DNA of 64,000 bases, from the NCBI GenBank assembly GCA_038087875.1, contig JAXLNO010000618.1, positions 124,001-188,000 on the forward strand, in the 5' to 3' direction. This DNA comes from Malacoraja senta. Its lineage: Eukaryota. The notes under the pieces are model-generated. The model was not told where the DNA came from. It made no database searches and saw nothing but the letters and a program-made list of their open reading frames with translations. Both the position numbers and the translations under genes were made by a program. Position 1 is the stretch's first letter; each line of letters starts with the position of its first letter. This document shows, one piece after another, positions 1-64,000 of this stretch.

Positions 1-100
1 AATAACTGAGTATATACAGCAATGTTATTATTACATCTGCTCGTTTGCGTTCTCCTCAACCCAAAACTCACATCGTTTTAAACTGCCAAACTACCCAAAT

Positions 101-371
101 CACAGTGGCACAGATGTTAGAGCTGCTGCCTCACAGAGGCGGAGACCAGGGTTCAATCCTGACCTCGGGTGGTCTCTGGGTGGAGATAGCACGCTCCCTG
201 TGGCCACGAATGAGTGGGGTTGTAGGGTACTTAACCTCCATAAATTGCCTGTAGTGTGTAGGGAGCGGACGGGAAAGTGAGATAACAGAACGAGTCAAAC
301 GGGTGATCAGAGGTCGGCACGGACAGAGGGCTGAACGGCAACTTTCCATGCTGTGTCTCAAAACTAAACTC
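101..371 (+). mobile_element. tRNA-derived SINE (HE1-like) with CR1-type tail
   Basis: A/B-box-like head (gtggcacagatgttag...ggttcaatcc) and tail ending ctcaaaactaaact; duplicate at 55625-55896. Confidence 0.75.
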
Positions 372-613
372 AATCAGAACATCACTATACATGTAAGAAG
401 ATTGACACCTACTCATCATTACAAAACAATAGATACTCTCATTCCCCAATGCCCTTGACATTTGTTATCCTCCAATAACCTTTAGAAAGATGAGGTTCCA
501 TGTCTCAACGCATCCAATGCATGCTTGAGCTCAGTAAATTCCCATTTGCCTTTGCCGAAATAAGGTTTTACAAGATGGATTTTACGGTGACACAAACGCT
601 TTCAACAGAAGTG

Positions 614-758
614 ATGTCTGAACCATGAGCAGGAAAGGAAGAGGGAGGTCCTGTAGTTTCATAAAACACAGAGTGAGACTGGGGAACTCAGTGTGTCGCC
701 GTGCTTGGAGCTTTGCTGCCCAAGTCTCTGGACTCGTTCACCAGTCTCTTCCCACAAG
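614..758 (+). other. Candidate distal 5' exon 1a (start unknown)
   Basis: Ends in CACAAG|GTAGGC; homologous to the 2344-2494 block and to 56138-56282. Confidence 0.45.
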
Positions 759-2266
759 GTAGGCGACCTTACTACAGGTTCACTTCAGGTAAAGGAGTGG
801 TTTAAATGGGATCTAGAAACGGAACACCGTGTTCAATAATTTCTAACGTGTGATATTCCACTCCTACAACCATTCATTAGACTGTTCCAGCCTGTTCTGC
901 TTTAGATTTTACAAGGACATAGAAACGTAATGAATAATGAAGAGAACACAAAATGCTGGAGTAACTCAGCGGGACAGGCAGTTACTCCCGCCCAGTTACT
1001 TTAGCGTTTATATTCGGTATCAAGCAGCATCTGTAGTTCCTTCCAACACGAAACTTTATCAATGTATATTTGTCTCCATTGTTTCCACTAGAAACTTAAT
1101 GAAGCTAAATTACCAGCATCTGCCATTTTACCCATTTGGGCTTTCTTCTTTGTTGCCTGGTCAATCTAATGTATCCATGCTCATGTGGATTTTATTTTTC
1201 CCATTTCTCCGGCAATCCTCTGGGACTGATTGAGGATGTTCAACGTCCTCGCCGTTCTGTTGCCCACTCAATTAAGTGAGGTACAAATGAGTTAAAACCA
1301 TTCTACCGAGAAGCAGGAAGTAAGTGGGTCAAGAATGAAAATGTCGGCGTACAGATGAGTCGTTTCAGTCAAGGCAAACCGACTGAATGTGGTTGTGAAA
1401 TCCCAGATTACAGCAGTGACAATATTCCAGTGGCAGATTCCACAGAGGAATGGTCCTTCCCCGTGTAATTGTGTGCGGTTAATTCTCAAATGGTCCGGTC
1501 CCAGGGTTTTCAAAGTGGCTGTGTTCAATACAACACTTGCCAACTAGCAATTTACTGCAGCATTTCCTTTGCAAATTATTTAGTGTTCCTGTTCCGTTCA
1601 AGATCACACGACGATGAAACATTCTTAAGTATGATTTTATAGATCATCACCACTTCAAATGGTGACATTTGTTTTAGAGAAATGCACGGTGGTTATGCGG
1701 GTTATTCTCGGAGGCTGTGAAGGTCTTGGTGCACTCTGTGAGGTTGAACTAGGAGAACACGGCAAGGTGCAGGAACAATTTGGATGCGAATGAAAATATT
1801 GGCTGGAGGTTCCTCCTTGAGTGAAATTAAAAGCTCGGGAGAAAATTAGCATTCAATATTGTACTAAGTTTGAAAATAATCTATGATCCTGATGATCAAA
1901 TGCACCTCATTTGTAACCCCCTAAACCCACCGTGATCTGATACATTTGGATATAGATTTAAACTGCAGGACCAGCTATAATGGTATATGGACATATAATG
2001 GTATATGGACACACTGATCTGTTTTGTAGTCAATGCCTATTATGTTCTGTTGTGCTGAAGCAAGAATTTCATTGTCCTATCAGGGACACATGACAATAAA
2101 CTCACTTGAACTTGTGCTAAAGCTTTAACATCGCTGCAAGGCGTGAATATTGACCATGTTCCCTTCGTTACAAAACAGCAGATTCCCTCGTTATTTGCCA
2201 CCCACTAATAGCATTTAATATAAGGAGGTTCCAAGTCTAAACGTATCCAATATATTTGTGACCTCA

Positions 2267-2276
2267 GGAAATTCCC
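2267..2276. promoter_or_regulatory. Consensus NF-kB site upstream of exon 1b
   Basis: GGAAATTCCC (reverse complement GGGAATTTCC), about 20 bp downstream of a CCAAT and about 70 bp before the exon 1b block; motif match only. Confidence 0.35.
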
Positions 2277-2343
2277 GATTTGGTTTGTCCAAATTAGCTT
2301 TTACAAGATGATTTTTAATCTGAGGCAAACATTATCAACACAA

Positions 2344-2494
2344 ATGGTGTCTGAATCCTGAGCTGGAAAGAAAGAGGAAGGGTGTTTGCCCTTCCAAAGA
2401 AACTGTGTGAGACTGTGAATCTCAGTGTGTCGCCATGCTTGGAGCTTTGTTGCTCAGTCTCTGTACTCATTCACCATCAGTCTCTTCTCACAAG
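2344..2494 (+). other. Candidate proximal 5' exon 1b (start unknown)
   Basis: Ends in CACAAG|GTAGGC. ATG 2435 (MLGALLLSLCTHSPSVSSHK) is in frame with the leader exon if spliced to 3055. Confidence 0.5.
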
Positions 2495-2717
2495 GTAGGC
2501 GAGCTCACTGCAGTCTCACTTCATGTCAAAGAATGGTTTAAAAGGTATCCACAAACTGAACAATGTTGGATGTCCTGTAAACTGTGGTTTATCACTCATT
2601 CAATCAGTTTGTTCCACTTTAGATTTGACAAGGGCATACACACTTTATTAATCTCGTTTTGCCTCCTTTGTTTCTCACAGCTAAATGACCAGCATATGCC
2701 ATTTTCCTACTGGTTTC

Positions 2718-2975
2718 AATAGACAATAGGTGCAGGAGTAGGCCATTCAATGTTATCATGACTGATCTTCCACAATCAGTACCCCGTTCCTGCCTTCTCC
2801 CCATATCCCATGACTCCGCTATCTTTAAGAGCTCTATCTAACTCTCTCTTGAAAGCATCCAGAGAACCGACCTCCACCGTCCTCTGAGGCAGAGAATCCC
2901 ACAGACTCGCAGCTCTCTGTGAGAAAAAGTGTTTCATCGTCTCCGTTCTAAATGGCTTACCCTTTATTCTTAAAC
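2718..2975 (-). mobile_element. CR1 LINE 3' fragment
   Basis: Reverse complement of the 3' end seen in the long CR1 copies; duplicate at about 58384-58621. Confidence 0.8.
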
Positions 2976-3054
2976 AGTGCTGTACTCAATACAACATTTG
3001 CCAACTACCAATTTACTGATCCTTAGTCTAAAACTGCACCTTATTTCCAAACAG

Positions 3055-3154
3055 AGAATGCACAAAATGAGGCCGAGGTTTCTCTGCAGCAGTTTGCCAC
3101 TTGGTTTGATGTTCGGTTTCTTTGTTTTCCTGCTTCGACCTGTTTCCACACAGA
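3055..3154 (+). CDS. Leader exon, copy 1 ([32 protein letters not shown])
   Basis: Acceptor ttatttccaaacag|, ATG 3058, hydrophobic core, phase-1 donor CAGA|GTAAGT. Confidence 0.85.
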
Positions 3155-6100
3155 GTAAGTGCTTTCTCTTCGCTGGTCACAACCACCTTGCATTAATTAT
3201 CATTGTCCGTGTAAACCCGCACACATTGTCAATCTCGCTTTACTCTCCACGTCCATGAATGTGCTGCTGCCTCCAAATCCACACCATCCTTCCTGGACCT
3301 CCATTCCACATCCCTGTATGTGTTGCTGCCTCACAAATCCACACCATCCTTCCTGGACCTCCATTCCACATCCCTGTATGTGTTGCTGCCTCATAAATCC
3401 ACGCCATCCTTCCTGGACCTCCATTCCACATCCCTGTATGTGTTGCTGCCTCACAAATCCACGCCATCCTTGCTGGACCTCCATTCCACATCCCTGAATG
3501 TGCTGCTGCCTCACAAACCCACACCATCCTTCCTGGACCTCCATTCCACATCGCTGTATGTGTTGCTGCCTCACAAATCCACGCCATCCTTGCTGGACCT
3601 CCATTCCACATCCCTGAATGTGTTGCTGCCTCATAAATCCACGCCATCCTTCCTGGACCTCCATTCCACATCCCTGTATGTGTTGCTGCCTCACAAACCC
3701 ACACCTTCCTTCCTGGACCTCCATTCCACATCCCTGAATGTGCTGCCGCCTCACAAATCCACGCCATCCTTGCTGGACCTCCATTTCTGAGCCCATCCCA
3801 TCAACTCCCTCTCCTTCTCCTGCACCGACACGGTCCTTATCAAAGTCAGAAATGGGCTCCTGTGAGCTTGTTGCAGAGTTAGACTCTCCCTCCTCATCCC
3901 GCTCAGCCTCTGCAGCCTTTGACACGGTTGTCCACACCATCCTTCCCAACATATCCTCACCACAGTCCAGGTGGGTGGAACTGCCCTCGACTTATCGATC
4001 CAGTCGCAGCCCGAGAACCACGCACAATGTCTTCACTTCACGCTCCCACAAAGTTCCTTCAAAACCAGGTGGAGTTCCTCCACTACCCCAACACAACCCC
4101 CTATCCCCACCTACGTCTCCCTCCCTCCCACTCACTCACTTCTCTCATGTGATGAAATATCCCTGCATCAATCAGGCCAGGTTATTCCAGACGACATCTC
4201 TTCACAAACCGTGTCTTCCTCGCTGGGGTTTCCAAGGAAGATCACAACTGTCTGGAATTAAATTCAGTTCAAAATTAATGATTACAGATATGGGGTGGAT
4301 GGGGAAAATGTGTTTTAAATATTAATTCTTCATTGTTCGTATTCGCAACAGCAAATAGAAATCGAATGTATTTCTTGGATAATGGAGGCGACATTGTGTT
4401 AAACGGACAGGACAATGCTGAGAAAGACACTGTTGTTGCCTGGGAATGGAAACCACACTCAGGGAAGGAAATCGGAAAATTGTCGACTTTTAGAAGAACG
4501 GGGCGCGATTGGATCAAAGTGAAGGCCGCTGGCGAGAGTAAAGTGGACTTGTACCCGGAGATGAAAGTGTATTCCCGTACCCTTGATCTGACAATTGATA
4601 AACCCACATTTAAATGGGCGGGAATTTTCACTTTGGCTCAAACAGAACCGAGAAAGCAAATCCTGAAACAATATGAAATATTTGGGATGAAAGGTGAGTG
4701 GGAGCGATAAGGATCAATAATGTTTAATTTATCTCTGTAAATATTGTCACCTATAATGATGAGAGATGGCGGGAATTGTGAGACTTCTTCCACCCGGTGA
4801 AAAGTTAAACAACTGGGGAAGTGTTTTTGTTCATTGATTCTGTAATGATCAGCAGGGGTGATAATAGTTTGATGACTTCACTGGGAACAGCAAATCAATG
4901 AATCGACCCGCAGCGAATACCATGGTCTTCTTGCCTGCACACGGAAGGTGATCGCGGCAAGGTGGTATGGAACCAATGTCTCCATGCAGTGGCCCCGGGG
5001 TGACACTGCTACTTAATGTTACCCTGTGACCAGGTGGATGGAAGTCCATCGCCTGTGGAACATGGGCTCTGCCATAGAGTTCACCTCTTGAGAGCAATCA
5101 GATACACCTAGGAGTGGAAATAGATGCATTTTCAACAGTTTGTGAATATTTGAAACAGAGCATGTGTAAATACAACAACACCTGAATGTTGCCGGTTCCA
5201 CCTGCAGTCACACGGTAAACAGCCGGCATTTCGCTGCGTCAATGTGAGCAGCCACGGGTGTCAGGGTTCTGAGAGCACTTGGGGAGAAGTTGTTCTGACT
5301 TTCAGCTACGTGTCAGCTTTAAGCCCGGTTATTGGATGAACCATGACATCCGCACTCTTCTGAAGTCCAGATTCCGGGCATTCAGGTCTGGGGATGCAGT
5401 GGTCTACAAGAAGTTCAGATACGACCTTGGTAAGGCCATCAAAAGTCCAAAAGGGACTTCTGCTCCAAGCTGGAGGATGAGACGGATGTTCGGCAACTAT
5501 CTTAGGGCTTGAATGCCATCACCTCCTATAAAGGCAAATTCAGGATGTAGCTCAAATGTCAGCGAAACATCACTCCCTGACGAGCTCAATGCGTTCTATG
5601 CACGCTTTGATAGGGAGAACACCGATGTGCCTTCCCGAGCCCCCATTCGCTGTGATGGTATTTCAGTCTCAGTCACAGAGGCCGACGTCAGAAAATCCTT
5701 CAGAGGGGTGAACCCTCGATAAGCACCTGGACCTGATGGTATACCTGGTCGTGTTCTAAAAACCTGTGCGGACCAACTGGCTGGAGTTTTTACGGACATT
5801 TTCAACCTCTCACTTCTGAGGTCTGAGGTTCCCACCTGCTTTAAAAGGGCATCAATTATACCAGTGCCCAAGAAGAGTAAGGTGATGTGTCTCAATGACT
5901 ATCGACCTGTGGCACTAACACCTGTGGTGATGAAGTGCTTTGAAAGGTTGATCATGGCGCAAATCAACTCCTACCTCGACAAAAACCTGGACCCACTGCC
6001 GTTCGCTTACCGCCACAACAGATCAACGGTGGATGCGATCTCGCTGGCCCTCCACTCTGCTCTGGACCACTTGGACAACAAAAACCCATATGTCAGGCTG

Positions 6101-9100
6101 TTATTCATTGATTACAGCTCGGCATTTAATACAATCATCCCCTCCAAGCTGGTTACCAAACTCTCAGATCTGGGTCTCTGTGCATCCCTCTGCAATTGGA
6201 TCCTCGACTTCCTCATTCACAGACCATAGTCTGTTCGTATTGGTGGAAATGTGTCAGCCTCGATAACAATCAGCACGGGAGCACCTCAAGACTGCGTGCT
6301 CAGTCCCCTGCTGTACTCACTCTATACTCATGAGTGCGTAGCCGGACACAGTGCGAACTCCATCATCCAGTTCGCTGACGACACCACTGTTGTGGGACAA
6401 ATCACTGATGGAGACGAGTCAGAGTATAGAAGAGAGATCGAGCAACTGTCCATATGGTGCCAGCACAATAACCTGGCCCTCAACACCAGCAAAACCAAGG
6501 AATTGATTGTGGACTTTGGAAGGGGTAGGATGGGGACCCACATTCCCGTTTATATCAACGGGTCGATGGTGGAAAGGGTCAAGAGCTTCAAATTCCTGGA
6601 CGTGCATATTTCCGAAGATCACTCCTGGTCCCAGAACACTGATGCAATTATAAAGCAAGTACATCAGCGCCTCTACTTCATGAGCAGATTACGGAGAGTC
6701 GGTTTGTCAAGGAGGACTCTCTCTAACTACTACAGGTGCACAGTAGAGAGCATGATGACCGGTTGCATCGTGGCTTGGTTCGGCAACTTGAGTGTCCAGG
6801 AGCGGAAAAAGCTACAAAAAGTAGTAAACACTGCCCAGTCCATCATCGGCTCTGACCTCCCTTCCATCGAGGAGATCTATCGCAGTCGCTGCCTCAAAAA
6901 GGCTGGCAGCATCATCAAGGACCCACACCATCCTGGCCACACACTCATCTCCCCGCTACCTTCAGGTAAAAGGTACAGGACCCTGAAATCTGCAACATCC
7001 AGGTTCAGGAACAGCTGCTTCCCCACAGCCATCTGGTTATTAAACACAACTTCAAACAAACTCTGAACTATAACAGCCTATTGCACTTTATCTGTTTATT
7101 TATGTGTGCATATATGTATATATATTCTATGGTACATGGACACACTGATCTGTTCTGTATTTATGCCTACAATATTCTGTTGTGCTGCAGCAAGCAAGAA
7201 TGTCATTGTCCCATCTGGGACTTGACTTGTACAAACCACTACTCACTCTGAATCTCATTGATCTGTTTTTCACAGTTGAGGCAAGTCCACAGAGGCCTCT
7301 GCTGGGCAGTGACGTCACACTCAGCTGCACCATCTCCAGACTCTCAGATACAGTCAGTCTTCACTGGAGACCCATGGACTCATCCCAGCAGAACAGGAGC
7401 AACACTGATCAGATCCGCCTGGATAACACGGTCTATCTGATGGTTCAACACGTTACAGTGGGGGATGGGAAGCTGTATGTGTGTGATGTGCAGGAAAACG
7501 GAAACATTGTTCACACAAGTAATGGAGATTTTACTGTAGAGAACGGTGAGTGTAAACACCTCCCATTGGATATCAAGTAGACACTTGTATCACGGTGCTT
7601 CTTGTAATATTATGTGTGTGCCCTGTGAAGAACTGTGGCAGTGACCAACTGCTCTCTAGTATAAAATGCTGCAATGATCAGGGAGAAGTTTACAGAAAGT
7701 CTCTCTCTCTGTGGAGCAGCTGCCTGCTTGTCTCTGTGTGACAGACACACAGCACAGGAGGGGGATGTCTTTCTGTAACCATTCTTCTGTCAAGTATTTT
7801 GTCAGTTTATCTTGCCATCAATGCTCCAGTATCTGAGACTGAGATACTGATACAGGACTCATGTCAAAGTGTCAGATAGAAAGTGTAGTCACCATGACAA
7901 CCACCAGCACTTGCTGCTCACACTCACACTGGGGGTCCCGGCCCACACATCAGCACTGAACAACAATCCATCCCCTCTCCCCTCACTGACCCTTCTCTCC
8001 GAGTCTGGTGTTGCTTGAAGTGATTCCAGCTGCTGCAGACTCTGGCTTCGGATCAGCATTCAACTGGGAGCAGGACCCGGGAACAGGGAAGGACAGGGAA
8101 TCAATGGGTGTGAATGGGAGAGGGATGGTGGGAATTATGGGAATGAAGGGACGGGAAGACCCGACCCACTTGAAGTGCCAACCTGTCCGGGTCAGTCCCC
8201 ACGCAGGCATCCTCTGGGCTGCTTCTGTCCGCAGCCTGAACCTGCACCACCTCCTGCAGACAGACTGACAGAGACATTCACCTCCCAGACCGCTCTCGGG
8301 AGTCTCCGGGAGGTTTCATTCCATCCCGGGAGATTCCCGGACAGTCCGGGTGTGGGGGCGAACCGAATGTTGAAATGTAGAGTGGAATATCCAAACTTCA
8401 CTGCAATTTACTGCCGTACAGGACATTGTATTTTATAAAGATCTGATGAGTTTAGTGCGGCATTCATGAAAGATGTTACATTTGAAACTTGATCAGCTGA
8501 ACAAAACACCACGAATGTTTATAAGAATACGGTTGAGAATCTCTGTATGGCACGGTAACTGTAATACTGAAAGGAGTTATCCTCTGTCTCTCTGATACAG
8601 ATTTATATAGGGAGATATACACACTTTACCGCTCCAGCACAGATCACAGTGAACTTCACCTGGTTTGTTCTGTGAGTTATGGTGATAGCTATTCCCGTGC
8701 TGAGTGGACCTGGACACCTCATCACCTTCAACAACACAAAGTAATAGCATCTGCAAACCGTTCTCAGCCCATCAATGTCAAAGGGACCGACTTCAGGAAT
8801 CGACTGGTGACCTCAGGGAAACCCTTCGATGGCGAGGATTTCAGTGTGAGGATTGTCCCCGTTTTGTTTCAAGATGCCGGAGTTTACGCATGTTTTCTGG
8901 AATCATATCCATTTCTCACCATTGATCTAATCACAGTGAAAGGTACGAGACAGAATGTTGCCACTGAGTTTACTGATGAACTTATTGTTTAAAATGTAAA
9001 CAACCTGCTTGTTTCCACAGTCACAGCTGAACCGTCTGATGCAGTGACTGAGGGAGACACCGTTACCCTGACCTGCTCTGTGTCTCACGTCATTGGGTCA

Positions 9101-12100
9101 ATGAGACTGGTTTGGATCAATGGCGATGGCAAAAGTGTTGGAGAAAAGACACTGACTGTGGAAGAGAAATCACAGAGTCTGGTTATTCAGAAAGCTGAGA
9201 GAGGCAGAGGGAACTGGAGATGTGGTTTGTTTCATCAAGACCTGCCCCGGCTTTTTGTCCCGTACTATCAGGAGCCCCGTGGTAAGTGATAAGGGTTTGT
9301 TCTTCATACTTAGAGTCATGATTGAGTTTTGATGTCGCTTATTGATCCTGAAATTTGAGTGGAATATTTTCTTCCAGTTTGAGTAGTCTAACTGTTATGA
9401 TCAATGAATTCTCAAATTTCAAATAACACTTCCCGAACCCCACTTCTCCCCCCCCCTTCATTGTGCACGCATTTATCCCACCACCCAGTTATCCTATTCT
9501 CTTCCCTTCCTCTTTCAACTCATCTCCCACCCCTTCCAATTGCAGAGTTTTCCTTTTATGTTCTTGCTCCACTTCCACCCATATCCCTCCCTCTGTTACT
9601 GATCTGACTGTAGATCAGTCAGTATTAGTTGACCTGATCTATGTCATGTTTTACTGCATGCCGCTGTGTACTCAAACAGTCATCATATTATCTGGTCTGT
9701 TAGTCCAGCCTCTAGTTAGATTCGTTGCTGAGCTTGAGCTTACAACACCTAAGTATTTGAGCTCTGTGTGTTTACTATAACAAACAACTTCTTCTTATGT
9801 ATGGATCCTGTTATTACACATGTTTACACTGACAACCTTTTGTCTCCATTTCACCCCTCCATTTTGTCATTATCTCCATCCATCTACTCATCACCATTCC
9901 CCACCTGTATCCACCTATCACTCACCATGCTTTGTCTCGTGCCTACTTCCCTTCCCCAGTTGTCACTCTCCCATTCCATCAGTCTGAGAATGCATCCTGA
10001 CATGAAACGTCATCAATCCATTCCCTCCACAGATGCTGCCTGACCCATTGAGTTTCTCCAACACTTTGCGTTTGATCAACATTCCACAATCTGCAGTTTC
10101 TTGTGTCTCCATGGAGACCCACTGGTCAACGTGGACAGATTGCTGCAGAGGGCCTGTTTCCATGCTGTTCCATGATGATGAATTATAACGTACAACTTAG
10201 TAAAGATTAATTCTCTGCAATATTGCTACTGACAAGGTCAGTGAAAAATTATTGTCCAAAATTTACACATTTGTTCTCTTTTCCTACAGGAAGTGGACAT
10301 TATATGTACTTTTTCCATCAGGAAGGCAACTTTGTATTGAAAGGACCAGACAGTCCTGGAAATGGCCCCATTGACTTGGAATGGAGGCCACACTCAGGGC
10401 AACAAACCACAAAGCGATTGGCCACTTTCCACAGAGAAGATCAGCAGTGGGACGTACAATGGAGTGATGAGTACATTCAAATACCAGGCATTTCCCAGAG
10501 GATGCATGCGGACTGGGGTACCCTTAATCTGAGGATCAGGATGCCCACATTCAAACTTGCAGGACTGTTCACCTGGACTCAAACAGAGTCCGCTGGGAAA
10601 ATCCTGAGACAGTGGGAACTATTTGGGATCAAAGGTAATAGAGTCATAGTGTCACACAGCACTGAAACAGGCCCTTTGGCCCAATTCATCCATACTGACC
10701 AACTACCCATCTAAACATCCCATTTGCCCTCATTTGGCCCATATCCCTTCAACCTTTTTTCCATCTACCTGTTTAAATGCCCTTTAAATGCTGTACCTGC
10801 ATCAAACACTTCCTCTGCTCGATCTTTCCATAAAGTATGTTTAGGTACCACACTCTTTGTCAAAACTGCCCCTAATATTAAGGGGTATATCAAATCTGCC
10901 CCTCTCACCTTAAACATGTACTAACTAGTTGTTGATTCCCCAACCCTGGACAAAAGACCATGTGCGTTTACTATAGATATGCCTCTCATGATTTTATTCA
11001 CTCCCATATAATCTCTGTTAAAGACATCCAAGAAATATAATGTCTGAAGAAGGGTCTCAACCTGAAACGTCACCTATCCATGTTCGCTAGAGTTCAAAGG
11101 TCTTTTATTGTCACGTGTACCAATTAAGGGGCAGTGATATTCATATTAACAGACCTGCTGAATTACTCCTGCACTTTATGTCCTTTTATATATTAACCAG
11201 CATCTGCAGTTCTGTGTTTCTACTATACTAAAAACATCCCTACCTGGAAGTGTTGATGTGGGAGACGAGGGGGCGAGGGGGACAGGTCGTCACTACCAGG
11301 AAGTGTTGATGTGGGAGACGATGGGGCGAGGGGGACAGGTGGTCACTACCAGGAAGTGTTGATGTGGTAGACGAGGGGGTGAGGGGGACAGGTGGTCACT
11401 ACCAGGAAGTGTTGATGTGCGAGACGAGGGGGCGAGGGGGACAGGTGGTCACGACCAGGAAGTGTTGATGTGGGAGACGAGGGGGCGAGGGGGACAGGTG
11501 GTCACTACCTGGAAGTGTTGATGTGGGAGACGAGGGGGCGAGGGGGACAGATGGTCACTACCTGGAAGTGTTGATGTGGGAGACGAGGGGGCGAGGGGGA
11601 CAGATGGTCACTACCAGGAAGTGTTGAAGACATCACTGAGCACGGTAGCTCAACATTCAGCCGACTGTCTGTCTGCAGGAAAAAGACAATTCTGCCCACA
11701 GTAGTTCAGAAAGCTGTTGGTGAACTGAACCACATGTGTCTGTTTCCACAGTTGAGGCCGACTCACCGAGGCCAGTGATGGGCAGTGACATCACCCTCAG
11801 CTGTACCATCTCCAGACTCTCAGATACCATCAGTCTTCACTGGAAACCAAGAGGCTCATCTCAGCAGAACAGGAGGAGCAACACTGATCAAATCCATCTG
11901 AATAACGCCGTCTATCTGATGATCCAACATGTTGGAGCAGGAAATCCCAATCTGTACACATGGGAAGTGCAGGAAAATACCTCCATTGTTCTCACTGGAG
12001 ACTCCAATGTCGAAGTGGATCAGGGTGAGTCCAAAGCTGCCTTGCAGCAGGTATTAAATAGATCTTGATATCAAACTGTTCCACATGTTGTATAGTGAGC

Positions 12101-23365: not shown

Positions 23366-23369
23366 GAAC

Positions 23370-24268: not shown

Positions 24269-24300
24269 GAATCTTTGGAGAAGAAAGGTTAAGGTCATGG

Positions 24301-31820: not shown

Positions 31821-31829
31821 GTAGGCTAA

Positions 31830-32640: not shown

Positions 32641-32642
32641 AA

Positions 32643-47342: not shown

Positions 47343-47349
47343 AATACCC

Positions 47350-49335: not shown

Positions 49336-49900
49336 AGTTGTGAAAAAATCAGGAAGGAAAACAGCCCAGAGATCAAAATAGACGAATCATTGTGGTTGAA
49401 TTGCATAAAAGCTCTTAATGCAGCCTTAACCATTGCTCTGAATTTTGCTTCAGGTCCTGAATGTGATATGAGTTTGTATGTTGGTTGCACCAAGCTTCAG
49501 TGCGTCCCTCAGCACGTTTTCCTGCAGTCTGGAGTGGGTCAAGTGGCAACATTCCCTGATGGACCACACGTTGACAGATCGTTGCTTCATTCCTCAGCAC
49601 AGTAACAGTGTGTGGGAGATGGGACAATGTTCCTGTCCTTATAATACAGCCTTTGACCCACAGTGAGCAGCACCAGAACAGAAGTATTGCAATTAAAGTT
49701 TTATCTTTAGAAACAAGAGACACTTCCTCAATCTTACATTCAATGGCCTTAGCATTGAAGGCAAGCATACCATACGCCTTCTTCACTACCCTAACTACTT
49801 GTGCTGCCACTTTCCGTGAGCTATTAACGTGGACTCCAAATGCACTGAAGATATGTGTCTCAAACTGGCTCAGTCTAAAATTCTATGTTATTTCCCACAG

Positions 49901-49934
49901 GGAATCCACAAAATGAGGCCCAGGTTTTTCTGCA
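49901..49934 (+). pseudogene. Truncated relic of the leader exon (GIHKMRPRFFC)
   Basis: ttatttcccacag|GGAATCCACAAAATGAGGCCCAGGTTTTTCTGCA matches 3041-3088; the first ATG has become ATC; similarity stops at an LTR-like element. Confidence 0.75.
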
Positions 49935-54200: not shown

Positions 54201-55624
54201 GTTAAGACAGGGGGTGATGTTTAGAATGTGAGAATGACAGACAGTGTGGGTTGGAGGGGCAATGAGATGAATTACGAAGAGACAGATTCAGGAGCTGGGG
54301 GAAATATCAAAACAGAGGGTGAGCAGCAATAAAATTGAATTGTATTTCTCTGCAGAATTCACACAATATGGGGGAAATGAGTTGTTCGGATTAAGGATGG
54401 AGCCTGATTAGATTTCTTGTCACAATTAGGACGACACTAACTCCTGAGCTGATGATGAGCTGCACTTTGTGATTCCCTCCAGAATTGTTGCTTATAAATC
54501 TATGTTTTTGGATGTGGGCCTCAGTGCTTAAGCTTCCATTTTAAACCCATGAGGATGTGACCATACTTATTTCACCACTGAGGTGTTTTGTAAATGATAG
54601 GAGTAGGCCCCACAAATAACGAAGGATCAGCAATGCATTTCCAAGTTATGATGGTGACTAACTGGGTCAATTTGTGCCACTCCAATAACTTGACCAAGCA
54701 ATTCTGGGTATGGATTGTGCTTGCATATTGTGGATATATTTTCTAGCACCGATGCAGTCATCAATGTAATGGGGATAGAGTTCGGGTATAGGGCCAGTGT
54801 ACACCTGGAACACAATGTATCTCTCGCGTCTATATCTCTAGGCTGTGAAGATCTTGGTGCAACTCTGTGAGTATGGGCTTGGAGAACACCAAATGACATG
54901 GGGAAAAACTTGTGAATGTGAAAATGTTTGCTGGAGGTTCTACCTTGAGTGAAATTCAGAACTGAGGAGAAAATTGCTCTCAATATTGGGCTTACTTTGA
55001 AAAATTGTAGTAGTTTGATTATCATATGCAGCTCATCGGTGACCTCCTAAGTCCAACCTCCACCATGATCTGATGCAATTGAATATTGGTTTGAACTATC
55101 GAACCAACTACAGCATGAACAGGCAAGAATATTGACCATTCCATTTATGACAAAACAACAGATTCTGTCATTTGCCATTATCATAGACCTTTCAAACATC
55201 ACACAGTCATCTGCTTGAATATGTGTTACTGGAAACTATTCTAACTTCAGTTGTGAATAGCATTCATTATGCTTGTCTTTCTCCAGGCTGGTTAGCACTC
55301 TGCAAAAGCTTTTCTCTTTACCTCAGAAACGTGACACTGAACTAAACTGAATTGAACTGGAAGGGACGTGATTTATTCCCAGAGGTTGTGAAGGTCTTGC
55401 TGCAAACTGTGCGGTTTGATTTGGAGAAAACTGAAAGTTGCAGAAGAAAGTGGATGTTCATGAGGATGGTAACTGGTGGGTTTACCTTGTGTGAAACTCA
55501 GGAGATTATTACACTCAATATTGGAATAACTGAGTAAATACAGCAATTTTATTATCACATCTGCTCGTTTGTGTTCTCCTCAACCTAAAACTCACATCGT
55601 TTTAAACTGCCAAACCACCCAAAT

Positions 55625-55896
55625 CACAGTGGCACAGATGTTAGAGCTGCTGCCTCACAGAGCCGGAGACCAGTGTTCAAATCTGGCATCGGGTGGTCTC
55701 TGGGTGGAGATAGCACGCTCCCTGTGGCCACGAATGAGTGGGGTTGTAGGTTACTTGACCTCAATAAATTGCCTGTAGTGTGTAGGGAGCGGACGGGAAA
55801 GTGAGATAACAAAACGAGCGTGAACGGGTGATCAGTGGTCGGCGTGGACGGAGGGCTGAAGGGCATGTTTCCATGCTGTGTCTCAAAACTAAACTC
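55625..55896 (+). mobile_element. SINE, duplicate of 101-371
   Basis: Collinear match within the segmental duplication. Confidence 0.75.
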
Positions 55897-56464
55897 AATC
55901 AGAACATCACTACAGATGCAAGAAAATTGACACCTACTCATCATTACAAAACTTAGATACTCTCATTCCCCAATGCCCTTAATATTTGTTATCCTCCAAT
56001 AACCTTTAGAAAGATGAGGTTCCATGTCTCAACGCATCCAATGCATGTTTGAGCTCAGTAAATTCCCATTTGCCTTTGCCGAAATAAGGTTTTACAAGAT
56101 GGGTTTTACGCTGACACAAACGCTTTCAACAGAAGTGATGTCTGAACCATGAGCAGGAGAGGAAGAGGGAGGTCCTGTAGTTTCATAAGACACAGAGTGA
56201 GACTGGGGAACTCAGTGTGTCGCCGTGCTTGGAGCTTTGCTGCCCACGTCTCTGGACTCGTTCACCAGTCACTTCCCACAAGGTAGGCGACCTTACTACA
56301 GGTTCACTTCAGGTAAAGGAGTGGTTTAAATGGGATCTAGAAACGGAACTCCGTGTTCAATAATTTCTAACGTGTGATATTCCACTCCTACAACCATTCA
56401 TTAGACTGTTCCAGCCTGTTCTGCTTTAGATTTTACAAGGACATAGAAACGTAATGAATAATGA

Positions 56465-56650
56465 AGAGAGACACAAAATACTGGAGTAACTCAGCGAGAC
56501 AGGCAGCATCTGGAGAGAAAGAATGGGTGACGTTTCAGGTCGAGACCTTTCTTCAGACCCAGACTTCTTCGACCCGAAACGTCACCCATTCCTTCTTTCC
56601 AGAGATGCTGCCTGTCCCGCCCAGTTACTCCCGCCCAGTTACTTTAGTGT
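56465..56650. repeat. Palindromic short interspersed repeat
   Basis: ctggagtaactcagcg.gacaggcagcatct...gggtgacgtttc...gaaacgtcaccc...agatgctgcctgtcccgc; related pieces near 940, 9970, 11040, 21230, 38800, 39240, 39620 and 53520. Confidence 0.75.
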
Positions 56651-59066
56651 CTATATTCGGTATCAAGCAGCATCTGTAGTTCCTTCCAACACGAAACGTT
56701 ATCAATGTATTTTTGTCTCCATTGTTTCCACTGGAAACTTAATGAAGCTTAATTACCAGCATCTGCCATTTTACCCATTTGGGCTTTCTTCTTTGTTGCC
56801 TGGTCAATCTAATGTATCCATGCTAATGTGGATTTTATTTTTCCCATTTCTCCGGCAATCCTCTGGGACTGATTGAGGATGTTCAACGTCCTCGCCGTTC
56901 TGTTGCCCGCTGAATTAATTGACTGCCTAGTGAGGTACAAATGAGTTAAAACCATTCTACCGAGAAGCAGGAGGTAAGTGGGTCAAGAATGAAAATGTTG
57001 GCGTACAGATGAGTCGTTTCAGTCAAGGCAAACCGACTGAATGTGGTTGTGAAATCCCAGATTACAGCAGTGACAATATTCCAGAGGCAGATTCCACAGA
57101 GGAATGGTCCTTCCCCGTGTAATTGTGTGCGGTTAATTCTCCAATGGTCCGGGCCCAGGGTTTTCAAAGTGGCTGTGTTCAATGCAACACTTGCCAACTA
57201 GCAATTTACTGCAGCATTTCCTTTGCAAATTATTTAGTGTCCCTGTTCCGTTCAAGATCACACGACGATCAAACATGCTTAAGTATAATTTTACCGATCA
57301 TCACCACTTCAAATGGTGACATTTGTTTTAGAGAAATGCAAGGTGGTTATGCGGGTTATTCTCAGAGGCTGTGAAGGTCTTGGTGCACGCTGTGAGGTTG
57401 AACTTGGAGAACACTGCAAGGTGCAGGAACAATTTGGATGCGAATGAAAATATTGGCTGGAGGTTCCTCCTTGAGTGAAATTAAAAGCTCGTGAGAAAAT
57501 TTGCATTCAATATTGTACTAAGTTTGAAAATAATGTATGATCCTGATTATCAAATGCACCTCATTTGTAACCCCCTAAACCCACCGTGATCTGATACATT
57601 TGGATATAGATTTAAATTGCAGGACCAGCTATAATGGTATATGGACATATAATGGTATATGGACACACTGATCTGTTTTGTAGTCAATGCCTACTATGTT
57701 CTGTTGTGCTGAAGCAAGAATTTCATTGTCCTATCAGGGACACATGACAATAAACTCACTTGAACTTGTGCTAAAGCTTTAACATCGCTGCAAGGCGTGA
57801 ATATTGACAATGTTCCCTTCGTTACAAAACTGCAGATCCCTCGTTTGCCATTATCTTAGACATTTGCCACCCACTAATATCATTTAATATAAGGAGGTTC
57901 CAAGTCTAAACTTATCCAATATATTTGTGATCTCAGGATATTCCCGATTTGGTTTGTCCAAATTAGCTTTTACAAGATGATTTTTAATCTGAGCCAAACA
58001 TTATGAACACAAATGGTGTCTGAACCCTGAGCTGGAAAGAAAGAGGAAGGGTGTTTGCCCTTCCAAAGAAACTGTGTGAGACTGTGAATCTCAGTGTGTC
58101 GCCGTGCTTGGAGCTTTGTTGCTCAGTCTCTGTACTCATTCACCATCAGTCTCTTCTCACAAGGTAGGTGACCTCACTGCAGTCTCACTTCATGTCAAAG
58201 TGGTTTAAAAGGTATCCACAAACTGAACAATGTTGGATGTCCTGTAAACTGTGATATATCACTCATTCAATCAATTTGTTCCACTTTAGATTTGACAAGG
58301 GCATACAAACTTTATTAATTTCATTTTGTCTCCTTTGTTTCTCACAGCTAAATGACCAGCATATGCCATTTTCCCACTGGTTTCAATAGACAATAGAGAA
58401 TAGGTGCAGGAGTAGGCCATTCAATTTGATCATGGCTGATCTTCCCCAATCAGTACCCCGTTCCTGCCTTCTCCCCATATCCCCTGACTCCGCTATCTTT
58501 AAGAGCCCTATCTAGCTCTCTCTTGAAAGCATCCAGAGAACCGGCCTCCACCGCCCTCTGAGGCAGAGAATTCCACAGACTCACAACTCTCTGTGAGAAA
58601 AAAGTGTTTCCTCGTCTCCGTTTCCTAGTCAATCTAAATTGAATACTTTTTTCCCGTTTCGCCGACAAAGTCCTGGGACCGTTTGAGAATATTGAATGTC
58701 CCTTGCCATTCTGTTGCCTTCTCTGTTCATTGACTCACTAGCGAGGTCTGATTTAGTTGAGAATATTTTACCGAGTGGTAGGGGGTAATTGAGCCAAACA
58801 TTAAAAAAGACGGAGTTCAGATGAGTGATTTGGGACAAGGCAAACCGATAGCGGTTGAATATGGTGGTGAAATCCCAGATTACTGAAGTGACAATATTCT
58901 AGCGGCAGAGTCCACCAAGCGAATGTATTTTCCCCGTGTAATTGTGTGCGGCCAATTCTAATGTGCCCCAGGGTCAGGAGTTTCAAACTGGCTGTACTCA
59001 ATACAACATTTGCCAACTACCAATTTACTGATCCTTAGTCTAAAACTGCACCTTATTTCCAAACAG

Positions 59067-59166
59067 AGAATGCACAAAATGAGGCCGAGGTTTCTCTGCA
59101 GCAGTTTGCCACTTGGTTTGATGTTCGGTTTCTTTGTTTTCCTGCTTCGACCAGTTTCCACACAGA
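59067..59166 (+). CDS. Leader exon, copy 2
   Basis: ATG 59070; same peptide as copy 1; donor GTAAGT at 59167. Confidence 0.85.
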
Positions 59167-62100
59167 GTAAGTACTTTCTCTACGCCGGTCACAATCACCT
59201 TGCATTAATTATCATTGTCCGTGTAAACCCGCACCCATTGTCAATCTCGCTTTCCTCTCCACGTCCCTGAATGTGCTGCTGCCTCACAAATCCACGCCAT
59301 CCTTGCTGGACCTCCATTTCCGAGCCCATCCCATCAACCCCCTCTCCTTCTCCTGCACCGACACGGTCCTTATCAAAGTCATAAATGGCCTCCTGTGAGC
59401 TTGTTGCAGAGTTAAACTCTCCCTCCTCATCCCGCTCAGCCTCTGCAGCCTTTGACACGGTTGTCCACATCATCCTCCCCAACATCTCCTCACCACAGTC
59501 CAGGTGGGTGGAACTGCCCTCGACTTATCGATCCAGTCACAGCCCGAGAACCACGCACAATGTCTTCACTTCACGCTCCCACAAAGTTCCTTCAAAACCA
59601 GGTGGAGTTTCTCCACTACCCCCAAGACAACCCCCTATCCCCACCTCCGTCTCCCTCCCTCCCACTCACTCACTTCTCTCATGTGATGAAATATCCCTGC
59701 ATCAATCAGGCCAGGTTATTCCAGACAGACATCTCTTCACAAACCGTGTCTTCCTCGCTGGAGTTTCCAAGGAAGATCACAACTGCCTGGAATTAAATTC
59801 AGTTCAAAATTAATGATTACAGATATGGGGTGGGTGGGGAAAATGTGGTTTAAATATTAATTCTTCATTGTTCGTATTCGCAACAGCAAACAGAAATCGA
59901 ATGTATTTCTTGGATAACCGAGGCGACATTGTGTTAAACGGACCGGACAATGCTGAGAAAGACACTGTTGTTGTCTGGGAATGGAAACCACACTCAGGGA
60001 AGGAAATTGGAAAATTGTCGACTTTTAGAAGAACGAGTGACTATTGGATCAAAGTGAAGGCCGCTGGCGAGAGTAAAGTGGACTTGTACCCGGGGATGTA
60101 TGTGAATCCCTATACCCTTGATCTGACAATTGATAAACCCACATTTAAATGGGCGGGAATTTTCACTTTGACTCAAACAGAACCGAGAAAGCAAATCCTG
60201 AAACAATATGAAATATTTGGGATGAAAGGTGAGTGGGTGCGATAAGGATCAATAATGTTTAATTTATCTCTGTAAATATTGTCACCTATAATGATGAGAG
60301 ATGGCGGGAATTGTGAGACTTCTTCCACCCGGTGAAAAGTTAAACAACTGGGGAAGTGTTTTTGTTCATTGATTCTGTAATGATCAGCAGGGGTGATAAT
60401 AGTTTGAAGACTTCACTGGGAACAGCAAATCAATGAATCGACCCGCAGCGAATACCATGGTCTTCTTGCCTGCACACGGTAAGGTGATCGCGGCAAGGTG
60501 GTATGAAACCAATGTCTCCCTGCAGTGGCCCCGGGGTGACACTGCTACTTAATGTTACCCTGTGACCAGGTGGATGGAAGTCCATCGCCTGTGGAACATG
60601 GGCTCTGCCATAGAGTTCACCTCTTGAGAGCAATCAGATACACCTAGAAGGAGTGGAAATAGATGCATTTTCAACAGTTTGTGAATATTTGAAAGAGAGC
60701 ATGTGTAAATACAACAACGCCTGTATGTTGCCGGTTCCACCTGCAGTCACACGGTGAACAGCCGGCATTTCACTGCGTCAATATGACCAGCCACGGGTGT
60801 CAGGGGTCTGAGAGCACTGGGGGAGAAGTTGTTCTGACTTTCAGCTAGGCTGTCAGCTTTAAGCCCGGTTATTGGATGAACCATGAGATCCGCACTCTTC
60901 TGAAGTCCAGATTCCGGGCATTCACGTCTGGAGATGCAGTGGTCTACAAGAAGTTCAGATACGACCTTGGTAAGGCCAACAAAAGTCCAAAAGGGACTTC
61001 TGCTCCAAGCTGGAGGATGAGACGGATGTTCGGCAACTGTGGTAGGGCTTGAATGCCATCACCTCCAACAAGGCAAAATCAGGAGGCAGCTCAAATGTCA
61101 GCGAAACATCACTCCCTGATGAGCTCAATGCGTTTTACGCACGTTTTGATAGGGAGAACACCGATGTGCCTTCCATTCGCTGTGATGGTATTTCAGTCTC
61201 AGTCACAGAGGCCGACGTCAGGAAATCCTTCAGAGGGGTGAACCCTCGAAAAGCGCCTGGACCTGATGGTATACCTGGTCGTGTTCTAAAAACCTGTGTG
61301 GACCAACTGGCTGGAGTTTTTACGGACATTTTCAACCTCTCACTTCTGAGGTCTGAGGTTCCCACCTGCTTTAAAAGGGCATCAATTATACCAGTGCCTA
61401 AGAAGAGCAAGGTGACGTGCCTCAATGACTATCGACCTGTGCCACTAACGCCTGTGGTGATGAAGTGCTTTGAGAGGTTGATCATGACGCAGATAAACTC
61501 CTACCTCGACAAAAACCTGGACCCACTGCCGTTCGCTTACCGCCACAACAGATCAACGGTGGATGCGATCTCGCTGGCACTCCACTCCGCTCTGGACCAC
61601 TTGGACAACACAAACTCATATGTCAGGCTGTTATTCATCGATTACAGGTCGCCATTTAACACAATCATCCCCTCCAAGCTGGTTACCAAACTCTCAGATC
61701 TGGGTCTCTGCGCATCCCTCTGCAATTGGATCCTCAACTTCCTCATTCACAGACCACAGTCTGTTCGTATTGGTGGAAATGTGTCAGACTCGATAACAAT
61801 CAGCACGGGAGCACCTCAAGGCTGCGTGCTCAGCCCCCTGCTGTACTCACTCTATACTCATGACTGCGTAGCCGGACATAGTGCGAACTCCATCATCAAG
61901 TTCGCTGATGACACCGCTGTTGTGGGACGTATCACTGATGCGGACGAGTCAGAGTATAGAAGTGAGATCGACCGATTGACCAAATGGTGCCAGCACAATA
62001 ACCTGGCCCTCAACACCAGCAAAACCAAGGAATTTGGAAGGGGTAGGATGGGGGCCCACAGTCCCGTTTATATCAACGGGTCGATGGTGGAAAGGGTCAA

Positions 62101-63063
62101 GAGCTTCAAATTCCTGGGCGTGCATATTTCTGAAGATCTCTCCTGGTCCCAGAACACTGATGCAATTATAAAGTGAGCTCATCAGCGCATCTACTTCCTG
62201 AGAAGATTACGGAGAGTCGGTTTGTCAAGGAGGACTCTCTCGAACATTTACAGGTGCACAGTAGAGAGCATGCTGACTGGTTGCATCGTGGCTTGGTTCG
62301 GCAACTTGAGCGCCCAGGAGCGGAAAAAGCTACAAAAAGTAGTAAACACTGCCCAGTCCATCATCGGCTCTGACCTCCCTTCCATCGAGGGGATCTATCG
62401 CAGTCGCTGCCTCAAAAAGGCTGGCAGCATCATCAAGGACCCACACCATCCTGGCCACACACTCATCTCCCCGCGACCTTCAGGTAGAAGGTACAGGACC
62501 CTGAAATCTGCAACATCCAGGTTCAGGAACAGCTGCTTCCCCACAGCCATCTGGTTATTAAACACAACTTCAAACAAACTCTGAACTATAACAGCCTATT
62601 GCACTTTATCTGTTTATTTATGTGTGCATATATGTATATATATTCTATGGTACATGGACACACTGATCTGTTCTGTATTTATGCCTACAATATTCTGTTG
62701 TGCTGCAGCAAGCAAGAATGTCCTTGTCCCATCTGGGACTTGACTTGTACAAACCACTACTCACTCTGAATCTCATTGATCTGTTTTTCACAGTTGAGGC
62801 AAGTCCACAGAGGCCTCTGCTGGGCAGTGACGTCACACTCAGCTGCACCATCTCCAGACTCTCAGATACAGTCAGTCTTCACTGGAGACCCATGGACTCA
62901 CCCCAGCAGAACAGGAGCGACACTGATCAGATCCGCCTGGATAACACGGTCTATCTGATGGTTCAACACGTTACAGTGGGGGATGGGAAGCTGTATGTGT
63001 GTGATGTGCAGGAAAACGGAAACATTGTTCACACAAGTAATGGAGATTTTACTGTAGTCAACG
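59070..63063 (+). CDS. Copy 2 of the Ig receptor gene, 5' part only (leader, domains 1-2); continues beyond the window
   Basis: Exons 59067-59166, 59887-60228 and 62794-63063 have the same lengths, phases and splice sites as copy 1 and are open. Confidence 0.85.
59887..60228 (+). CDS. Ig domain 1 exon, copy 2
   Basis: 342 nt, open, 12 amino-acid differences from copy 1. Confidence 0.88.
60840..62770 (+). mobile_element. Rex1/Babar-type LINE, duplicate copy
   Basis: Same position in copy 2; ORF 61049-62176 with GAPQGCVLSP and KFADDT; different lesions from copy 1. Confidence 0.88.
62794..63063 (+). CDS. Ig domain 2 exon, copy 2
   Basis: 270 nt, open, 3 amino-acid differences from copy 1. 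Confidence 0.9.
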
Positions 63064-64000
63064 GTGAGTGTAAACACCTCCCATTGGATATCAAGTAGAC
63101 ACTTGTATCACGGTGCTTCTTGTAATATTATGTGTGTGCCCTGTGAAGAATTGTGGCAGTGACCAACTGCTCTCCAGTATAAAATGCTGCAATGATCAGG
63201 CAGAAGTTTACAGAAAGTCTCTCTCTCTGTGGAGAAGCTGCCTGCTTGTCTCTGTGTGACAGACACACAGCACAGGAGGGGGATGTCTTTCTGTAACCAT
63301 TCTTCAGTCAAGTATTTTGTCAGTTTATCTTGCCATCAATGCTCCAGTATCTGAGACTGAGATACTGATACAGGACTCATGTCAAAGTGTCAGATAGAAA
63401 GTGTAGCCACCATGACAACCACCAGCACTTGCTGCTCACACTCACACTGGGGGTCCCGGCCCACACATCAGCACTGAACAACAATCCATCCCCTCTCCCC
63501 TCACTGACCCTTCTCTCCGAGTCTGGTGTTGCTTGAAGTGATTCCAGCTGCTGCAGACTCGGGCTTCGGATCAGCATTCAGCTGGGAGCAGGACCCGGGA
63601 ACAGGGAATCAATGGGTGTGAATGGGAGAGGGATGGTGGGAATAATGGGAATGAAGGGACGGGAAGACCCGACCCACTTGAAGTGCCAACCTGTCCGGGT
63701 CAGTCCCCGCGCAGGCATCCTCTGGGCTGCTTCTGTCCGCAGCCTGAACCTGCACCACCTCCTGCAGACAGACTGACAGAGACATTCACCTCCCAGACCG
63801 CTCTCGGGAGTCTCCGGGAGGTTTCATTCCATCCCGGGAGATTCCCGGACAGTCCGGGTGTGGGGGCGAACCTAATGTTGAAATGTAGAGTGGAATATCC
63901 AAACTTCACTGCAATTTACTGCCGTACAGGACATTGTATTTTATAAAGATCTGATGAGTTTAGTGCGGCATTCATGAAAGATGTTACATTTGAAACTTGA

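What the first reader, a model, noticed from the sequence alone, without database searches (positions are those of the whole stretch)
1..64000. Tandem array of this receptor with a period of about 55.5 kb, or two haplotypes joined across a gap
Seen: 1-8492 recurs at 55525-64000 with open leader, D1 and D2 exons, and a third leader relic lies at 49901. Known: CD4 and LAG-3 are normally low-copy, whereas tandem multigene arrays typify rapidly evolving immune receptor families. Inference: a multigene family undergoing birth and death. Caveat: a 145-N gap lies between the copies, so copy 2 could be an uncollapsed allele.
Basis: partly seen in the sequence, partly recalled or inferred. Interest (0 to 1): 0.7.

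Follow-up and report, generated by a model that had tools for sequence, protein, structure and literature searches.

The report
Duplicated skate immune-receptor gene block
An 8.5-kb block holding the start of an eight-domain skate immune-receptor gene occurs twice, 55.5 kb apart and about 3.5% different. The two are probably neighbouring sister genes of a fast-turning-over family, but an assembly gap between them means two parental versions of one gene cannot be excluded.

Summary
Window 1-8492 recurs at 55525-64000 in direct orientation, at 96.5% identity with 22 indels. The leader, D1 and D2 exons are open and correctly spliced in both copies. A 70-bp leader relic lies at 49869-49938.

Both window ends cut the repeat, so its length and any "period" are unknown. 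Only two copies are visible.

The receptor is not CD4 or LAG-3. It belongs to an unnamed elasmobranch IgSF family annotated only as "uncharacterized protein".

I favour real paralogues on one chromosome (about 0.65):
- Non-coding divergence is 3.5%, against genome-wide vertebrate heterozygosity of 0.1-1.6%.
- The closest available genome, Amblyraja radiata, has at least four copies of the same unit on one chromosome. Two are tandem in gap-free sequence, and they differ by 3.6-5.0%.
- The two window copies are sisters, separated by about 45% of the between-species distance.

Uncollapsed haplotypes stay possible (about 0.25). A gap lies between the copies. Unverified scan notes report duplications across gaps in ordinary genes of this assembly.

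Earlier scan notes already described this receptor family elsewhere in this genome.

Read depth or a spanning molecule is needed to decide.

The parts
1..8492 (+). Copy 1 of the repeated block: about 3 kb upstream, leader, D1, a LINE-bearing intron, D2, and about 0.9 kb of the next intron. Cut by the window start.
   Evidence: Self-blastn; global alignment.
55525..64000 (+). Copy 2 of the repeated block, cut by the window end.
   Evidence: 96.5% identity to copy 1.
3058..3154 (+). Copy 1 leader exon: ATG, signal peptide, phase-1 donor.
4352..4693 (+). Copy 1 D1 exon: membrane-distal domain with no Pfam match.
   Evidence: A D1 profile finds only 36 representative proteins.
7276..7545 (+). Copy 1 D2 exon (Ig).
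8601..15079 (+). The rest of copy 1's ectodomain: D3 8601-8942, D4 9021-9281, D1' 10290-10634, D2' 11752-12024, D3' 13664-14002, D4' 14810-15079. All exons are phase 1 and open.
21556..21663 (+). Copy 1 transmembrane exon.
24684..24791 (+). Copy 1 first cytoplasmic exon. It has an in-frame stop where relatives have the tyrosine of LY(G/A)NP. No later tail exons were found in the window.
59070..59166 (+). Copy 2 leader exon: 1 nt difference from copy 1, no amino-acid change.
59887..60228 (+). Copy 2 D1 exon: 19 nt and 12 aa differences from copy 1.
62794..63063 (+). Copy 2 D2 exon: 4 nt and 3 aa differences from copy 1.
49869..49938 (+). Relic of a third leader exon: 70 bp, first ATG lost.
52343..55524 (+). 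Sequence upstream of copy 2. In A. radiata it belongs to the same repeated unit, so the unit probably starts at least 3 kb left of the visible repeat.
   Evidence: L001 35166-36350, L002 5-1318 and L003 1450-5041 match at 88-95%.
32643..32787 (.). Assembly gap of 145 N between the copies. The 100-bp flanks are 72-74% A+T, and no recognisable gene or element crosses it.
3246..3785 (+). 60-bp minisatellite in intron 1: 9 units in copy 1, 1 unit in copy 2.
5273..7063 (+). LINE reverse-transcriptase fragment in the D1-D2 intron. Both copies have it (copy 2: 60750-62581), so it was inserted before the copies separated.

Best explanation
The two blocks are real paralogues lying in the same orientation on one chromosome. 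Each is the 5' part (promoter region, leader, D1, D2) of a gene of an unnamed elasmobranch Ig-superfamily receptor family that sits in a multigene cluster. The most likely mechanism is unequal crossing-over or segmental duplication of a unit of gene plus about 7 kb upstream. It happened after the lineage split from Amblyraja, or the copies were kept alike until then by gene conversion. The copies then diverged independently to about 3.5%, with deletions in copy 1 and most amino-acid changes in the membrane-distal D1. Partial re-homogenisation produced the 99%-identical 3' end of the visible block. The 70-bp leader relic and the stop-truncated tail exon of copy 1 are the 'death' side of the turnover.

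Shown: the repeat, the intact exons, the divergence, and the cross-species pattern. Inferred: that both copies sit on one molecule, the mechanism, and the timing. A regular 55.5-kb period is not established.
For: 1. Divergence. Non-exonic divergence is 3.48% (253 of 7268 sites), with 22 indels in 8.5 kb. This is at least twice the genome-wide heterozygosity of 0.1-1.6% reported for 16 vertebrates including thorny skate (PMC8081667).
2. Substitution spectrum. Ts:tv for w1-w2 is 54:48. That matches proven A. radiata paralogues (80:66) and fixed between-species differences (40:36), so the differences are evolutionary, not sequencing noise.
3. The closest available genome. A. radiata CM021401.1 carries the same unit at least four times within 600 kb. 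Two copies are tandem, 30.6 kb apart, in a 60-kb stretch without any N, at 93-96.7% identity.
4. Tree. On 3625 gap-free columns, w1 and w2 are sisters with 1.5% branches. The w1-w2 distance is 2.8%, against 3.6-5.0% between A. radiata paralogues and 5.8-6.9% between species. Site patterns grouping by species outnumber those grouping by orthologue 184 to 7 and 6. The separation is therefore about 45% as old as the species split.
5. Outgroup polarity. The 118-bp and 327-bp indels are deletions in copy 1, because copy 2 and all A. radiata copies keep those segments.
6. Gap flanks. The sequence next to the gap on both sides is unique within the window. The visible duplicate blocks lie at least 19 kb from the gap rather than abutting it.
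7. Family context. Other elasmobranch assemblies list runs of adjacent family genes, for example Mobula birostris, M. hypostoma, Carcharodon, Pristis, Hypanus and Leucoraja.
Against: - A gap lies between the copies. That is one of the four hallmarks of false duplication (PMC9516828).
- Both ends of the repeat are hidden by the window. A 55.4-kb overlap of the two contig ends (window -22736..32642 against 32788..88166) cannot be excluded.
- Unverified scan notes report duplications across gaps inside ordinary genes of this assembly, such as ARHGEF4, GTF2I and RAB11FIP3. This raises the prior for an artefact.
- Heterotype false duplications arise precisely where haplotypes are unusually divergent, and immune clusters can be such places.
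- No read depth, spanning molecule or second assembly of this species was available.
Confidence: 0.65

Rival explanations
1. Heterotype false duplication. The contig right of the gap (32788 onward) would be the other parental haplotype of the region that ends at 32642. The scaffolder would have placed it in series, so copy 1 and copy 2 would be alleles of one gene and the haploid genome would have one copy fewer.
For: - A gap between same-scaffold duplicates is a listed hallmark (PMC9516828).
- The repeat reaches both window ends, as an overlap of about 55 kb would.
- Scan notes describe similar duplications across gaps in non-immune genes of this assembly (unverified).
- All three visible exons are intact in both copies, as expected of alleles.
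Against: - Divergence is 3.5% plus 22 indels, including 118-bp and 327-bp deletions and a 480-bp minisatellite difference. This equals the divergence of proven same-chromosome paralogues in A. radiata and is about 45% of the between-species distance. Alleles that old would need long-term balancing selection across introns and upstream DNA.
- The gap is 145 N, not a round number. If that is a real size estimate from spanning data, it argues against a 55-kb overlap. This is inference, because the assembly pipeline is unknown.
- The flanks of the gap are both A+T-rich simple sequence, as for a local drop-out in continuous DNA.
- A scan note places another family gene at -36881..-20731. Under a full overlap, its 3' end should reappear just right of the gap. 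No Ig or TM exon is found anywhere in 32788-55524. This is weak evidence, because it rests on a note I could not check.
Confidence: 0.25
2. Both copies are real paralogues, but the scaffold join at the gap is wrong. The right-hand contig would belong elsewhere in the same cluster, or in the other orientation. The 55.5-kb spacing and the tandem arrangement would then be artefacts even though the copy number is right.
For: - The join cannot be verified. No gene or repeat element is seen to cross the gap.
- In A. radiata the family copies are scattered over 600 kb in both orientations. That makes such clusters hard to scaffold.
Against: - Both gap flanks are similar A+T-rich simple sequence, and the gap has a specific estimated size.
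- A. radiata shows that direct tandem pairs of this unit do exist.
Confidence: 0.08

Closest known systems
Tandem multigene immune-receptor clusters evolving by birth and death or concerted evolution (mammalian KIR/LILR, teleost NITR/LITR; named from general knowledge)
   Same: Ig-superfamily receptor genes lie in same-chromosome clusters. Paralogues cluster by species. Pseudogene relics are present. Family members carry ITIM-like tails. Most amino-acid change falls in the membrane-distal domain.
   Different: This is an unrelated, unnamed elasmobranch family. It has a CD4-like V-C2-V-C2 module that is doubled to eight domains in this gene. Cis linkage of the two window copies is not proven.
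The same receptor unit in Amblyraja radiata (CM021401.1, LOC116966223 / LOC116966229 / LOC116966231)
   Same: DNA is 90-94% identical across upstream region, exons and introns. Exon order and the intronic LINE are the same. There is a tandem pair with 93-96.7% identity.
   Different: The A. radiata copies go from D4 straight to the TM region and lack window 9684-20734, so they are four-Ig, not eight-Ig. Their tandem spacing is 30.6 kb, not 55.5 kb.
CD4 and LAG-3 (PMC10768021)
   Same: Both use a four-domain V-C2-V-C2 module. A family profile hits LAG-3 (E 7e-11) and CD4 (E 4e-10) among solved structures.
   Different: Generic IgSF proteins score equally well or better (CEA 6e-14). The window gene has eight Ig domains and no Cx(C/H) Lck motif. 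It belongs to a multicopy cluster. D1 has no Pfam match and lacks the Ig cysteine pair.
Heterotype false duplication in genome assemblies (Ko et al. 2022, PMC9516828)
   Same: Two similar blocks lie on one scaffold with a gap between them, in a region expected to be polymorphic.
   Different: Divergence is far above usual heterozygosity. The visible duplicates do not abut the gap. Read depth, k-mers and linked reads could not be tested.

Membership tests
CD4 | Cytoplasmic Cx(C/H) Lck-binding motif (PMC10768021) | tested here: not met
   The copy 1 tail after the TM reads CQRKRKPT, then GLGNQRQTAPPSKRNTESESQL, then a stop. It has no Cx(C/H) motif. Family consensus tails carry IHYGSI and VIYAQI, which are ITIM-like motifs.
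CD4 / LAG-3 | Four extracellular Ig domains (V-C2-V-C2) in a low-copy gene at a conserved location | tested here: not met
   The gene has eight Ig exons, i.e. two four-domain modules. The family is multicopy in every elasmobranch examined. Conserved synteny was not tested.
CD4 / LAG-3 | Specific sequence relationship above generic IgSF similarity | tested here: inconclusive
   Single exons give no CD4 or LAG-3 hit in the PDB. A 17-sequence family profile hits LAG-3 at 7e-11 and CD4 at 4e-10, but CEA at 6e-14 and pIgR at 8e-10.
Birth-and-death tandem immune-receptor array | Several paralogues in cis on one chromosome | tested here: inconclusive
   Met in A. radiata: at least 4 copies, with two tandem in N-free sequence. 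In this window the two copies are separated by a gap, so cis linkage is unproven.
Birth-and-death tandem immune-receptor array | Species-specific clustering of copies, plus pseudogenes or relics | tested here: met
   The tree and site patterns support species clustering. There is a leader relic at 49869-49938 and an in-frame stop in the tail exon.
Heterotype false duplication (PMC9516828) | Gap between the duplicated blocks on the same scaffold | tested here: met
   A 145-N gap at 32643-32787 lies between copy 1 and copy 2.
Heterotype false duplication (PMC9516828) | Half read depth, haplotype-specific k-mers, discordant linked or long reads | not testable with these tools
   No reads of this genome are available.
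Heterotype false duplication (PMC9516828) | Divergence between the blocks in the range of haplotype differences | tested here: not met
   Non-coding divergence is 3.5%, against genome-wide heterozygosity of 0.1-1.6% in 16 vertebrates. It equals the divergence of proven paralogues in A. radiata. Local haplotype divergence at this locus is unknown, so this weakens the artefact reading but does not exclude it.

The most novel reading that the evidence does not exclude
The window shows one unit of a rapidly turning-over array of an undescribed elasmobranch inhibitory-type receptor family. In this array, whole genes are duplicated and homogenised within species, the ligand-distal D1 diversifies fastest, and the ectodomain switches between four and eight Ig domains between related skates. 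That would make it a cartilaginous-fish counterpart of the KIR/LILR/NITR systems, built from a CD4-like module.
Probability: 0.45. Interest if true: 0.55.

Novelty: new member of a known kind. Interest (0 to 1): 0.35.

Why it matters
If the two copies lie on one chromosome, the window documents recent gene birth in a large, still unnamed receptor family of sharks and rays. Amino-acid change is concentrated in the outermost domain, and domain number differs between related skates. This is the pattern seen in receptor families that track fast-evolving ligands.

If they are haplotypes, the case is a caution instead. Copy counts of this family in this assembly would be inflated, and the locus would be unusually polymorphic.

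Either way, CD4 and LAG-3 copy number is not the right comparison.

Tried and rejected
- Single-exon searches of the PDB with D3 and D1 gave no CD4 or LAG-3 hit. Pfam gives no family for D1.
- A search of the 5.8-billion-protein collection with the D1 ORF found only three skate proteins at 56-71% identity. It found no fragment from an independent data set of this species, so copy-specific variants could not be traced in other individuals.
- No protein of the window's own genome appeared among 62 family hits. The locus beyond 64000 therefore could not be fetched, and the extent of the homology could not be measured.
- P0073 is not on record in the contig index.
- The Leucoraja erinacea and Rhinoraja longicauda loci are only 83-92% identical in unique DNA, so neither is the source species. 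The species remains unidentified.
- Scan-note look-ups outside the window, by sequence and by relatives, returned errors or nothing.
- I looked for a gene or transposon running across the gap as a test of continuity and found none.
- I searched 24.8-55.5 kb for further Ig, TM or tail exons and found only the leader relic.
- D1 dN/dS between the copies is 1.14, not significantly above 1 (binomial p = 0.43), so positive selection is not shown.
- I rejected sequencing error as the source of the differences, because the substitution spectrum matches real divergence.
- The third large protein search was not spent, since it could not settle cis versus trans.
Full report
**Observation**

The window has one N run, 32643-32787, 145 N. 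Self-comparison shows that 1-8492 and 55525-64000 are collinear direct repeats in four blocks. A global alignment gives 7977 aligned columns, 277 mismatches (96.5% identity) and 22 indel events. The large indels are 118 bp, 327 bp, and 479 bp in a 60-bp minisatellite with 9 units against 1.

The alignment begins at base 1 and ends at base 64000. The true extent of the homology is therefore hidden on both sides. "Period 55.5 kb" is only the offset between two visible copies.

Identity is patchy, from 93.4% to 99.4% per 500 bp. The last 1.5 kb differs by 1.1% against 4.0% elsewhere (Fisher p = 7e-10).

**Gene content**

All exons obey the phase-1 rule with good AG/GT sites.

| Exon | Copy 1 | Copy 2 |
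|---|---|---|
| Leader | 3058-3154 | 59070-59166 |
| D1 | 4352-4693 | 59887-60228 |
| D2 | 7276-7545 | 62794-63063 |
| D3 | 8601-8942 | beyond window |
| D4 | 9021-9281 | beyond window |
| D1' | 10290-10634 | beyond window |
| D2' | 11752-12024 | beyond window |
| D3' | 13664-14002 | beyond window |
| D4' | 14810-15079 | beyond window |
| TM | 21556-21663 | beyond window |
| First cytoplasmic exon | 24684-24791 | beyond window |

- The first cytoplasmic exon of copy 1 carries an in-frame stop where relatives have a tyrosine.
- All three visible exons of copy 2 are open, with the same splice sites as copy 1.
- The copies differ at 24 of 709 coding nucleotides and 15 of 236 residues. Of these, 19 nt and 12 aa fall in D1.
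- dN/dS is about 1.0 overall and 1.14 in D1, which is not significant.
- A LINE reverse-transcriptase fragment sits in the D1-D2 intron of both copies, so it predates their separation.
- The third leader relic is a 70-bp fragment at 49869-49938 with its first ATG lost.
- No other Ig, TM or tail exon lies between 24.8 and 55.5 kb.

**The gap**

The last 100 bp on either side are 72-74% A+T simple sequence. No gene or recognisable element crosses the gap. It lies 7.8 kb after the last recognised exon of copy 1 and 26.3 kb before the leader of copy 2. Neither continuity nor reading frame across it can be tested.

**What the receptor is**

- D2, D3 and D4 match Ig models, and D1 matches nothing in Pfam.
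- A D1 profile finds only 36 representative proteins among 1.84 billion. All are "uncharacterized protein" of sharks, rays and skates, plus an eel.
- A full-length relative finds 62 family members. These include runs of neighbouring genes in Mobula, Carcharodon, Pristis, Hypanus, Leucoraja and others.
- A family profile hits LAG-3 (7e-11) and CD4 (4e-10) among solved structures, but also CEA (6e-14) and pIgR.
- CD4 is defined by a Cx(C/H) tail motif (PMC10768021). This gene lacks it, and family tails carry ITIM-like motifs.

It is therefore a CD4-like module architecture, doubled here, and not a CD4 or LAG-3 gene. Earlier scan notes reached the same view for other copies in this genome. I tested it only in part.

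**Cross-species test**

The closest available DNA is Amblyraja radiata chromosome CM021401.1, at 90-94% identity in unique sequence. One N-free 60-kb stretch holds two tandem copies of the same unit (upstream region, leader, D1-D4). They lie 30.6 kb apart and are 93-96.7% identical. Two further copies lie 0.4 Mb and 0.15 Mb away.

All A. radiata copies join D4 directly to the TM region and lack window 9684-20734. They are four-Ig genes.

A. radiata homology also covers window 52343-55524. The ancestral unit therefore starts at least 3 kb left of the visible repeat.

On 3625 gap-free columns the distances are:

| Comparison | Distance |
|---|---|
| w1 vs w2 (the two window copies) | 2.8% |
| A. 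radiata paralogues | 3.6-5.0% |
| Between species | 5.8-6.9% |

The ML tree puts w1 and w2 as sisters with 1.5% branches, and the four A. radiata copies form a clade. Sites grouping by species outnumber sites grouping by orthologue 184 to 7 and 6. The 118-bp and 327-bp indels are deletions in copy 1, judged against the outgroup. The ts:tv ratio of w1-w2 differences matches that of real divergence at this locus.

**Paralogues or haplotypes**

For paralogues:
- The copies separated about 45% as long ago as the two skate lineages.
- Their divergence equals that of proven same-chromosome paralogues.
- It is at least twice genome-wide vertebrate heterozygosity (0.1-1.6%; PMC8081667).
- The visible duplicates do not abut the gap.

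For haplotypes:
- A gap between same-scaffold duplicates is a hallmark of false duplication, and such errors concentrate in divergent regions (PMC9516828).
- The hidden ends allow a 55-kb overlap of the contig ends.
- Unverified scan notes list duplications across gaps in ordinary genes of this assembly.

One weak further point concerns a scan note that places another family gene at -36881..-20731. A full overlap would predict its 3' exons just right of the gap, and none are there.

My estimates are 0.65 for real cis paralogues, 0.25 for haplotypes and 0.08 for a misplaced contig.

**Verdict**

- The multigene birth-and-death reading is supported, mainly by cross-species evidence.
- The CD4/LAG-3 framing and the regular 55.5-kb period are not supported.
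- The allele caveat stands until read depth or spanning molecules are examined.

The scan has already noted this receptor family on other DNA of this genome.

Noticed in passing
window 9684-20734; L001 48424-49817, L002 16208-17166, L003 18545-20874: All four A. radiata copies pass from D4 to the TM region without the second four-domain module (D1'-D4') and the LINE that the window gene has. Closely related skates therefore differ between four-Ig and eight-Ig versions of the same gene unit.
   Followed up: partly
window 24684-24791: The first cytoplasmic exon of copy 1 has an in-frame stop at the tyrosine of the conserved LY(G/A)NP stretch. The later tail exons, which carry ITIM-like motifs in relatives, are not found anywhere in the window. 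A 254-bp repeat pair (24788-25041 / 27816-28069, 96.9%) that flanks a Pao-type retrotransposon piece starts right at the exon's end.
   Followed up: partly
window 32880-33020 and 34761-34903: 141-bp direct repeats (82.5% identical) flank a minus-strand element of about 1.7 kb with a 255-aa ORF that has no Pfam hit. It lies just right of the gap. A scan note reports long target-site duplications by an L1 subfamily nearby.
   Followed up: no
window 42265-46822 and 40169-41058: There is a large 34-bp satellite (134 copies, 93% matches) and a 26-bp satellite (34 copies). Both are C-rich on the + strand and sit in the spacer between the two gene copies.
   Followed up: no
window 16639-19476 and 28419-31260: Two copies of one LINE family are 94.7% identical. 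The right one has an open 725-aa endonuclease-RT ORF, and the left one lies in the D4'-TM intron. A third, older copy lies at 47713-49321 on the minus strand (77%).
   Followed up: partly
L001 10001-49964 (A. radiata LOC116966229): The public gene model for a 357-aa protein spans 40 kb and covers both tandem copies. It probably joins exons of two separate genes.
   Followed up: no
window 50425-50838: A G+C-rich 84-bp (41/84/168) minisatellite lies about 0.5 kb downstream of the leader relic.
   Followed up: no
window 61046-62173 versus 5723-7063: The intronic LINE RT is one open 376-aa frame in copy 2 but is split into pieces of 168 and 278 aa in copy 1. It has decayed independently since the copies separated.
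   Followed up: partly
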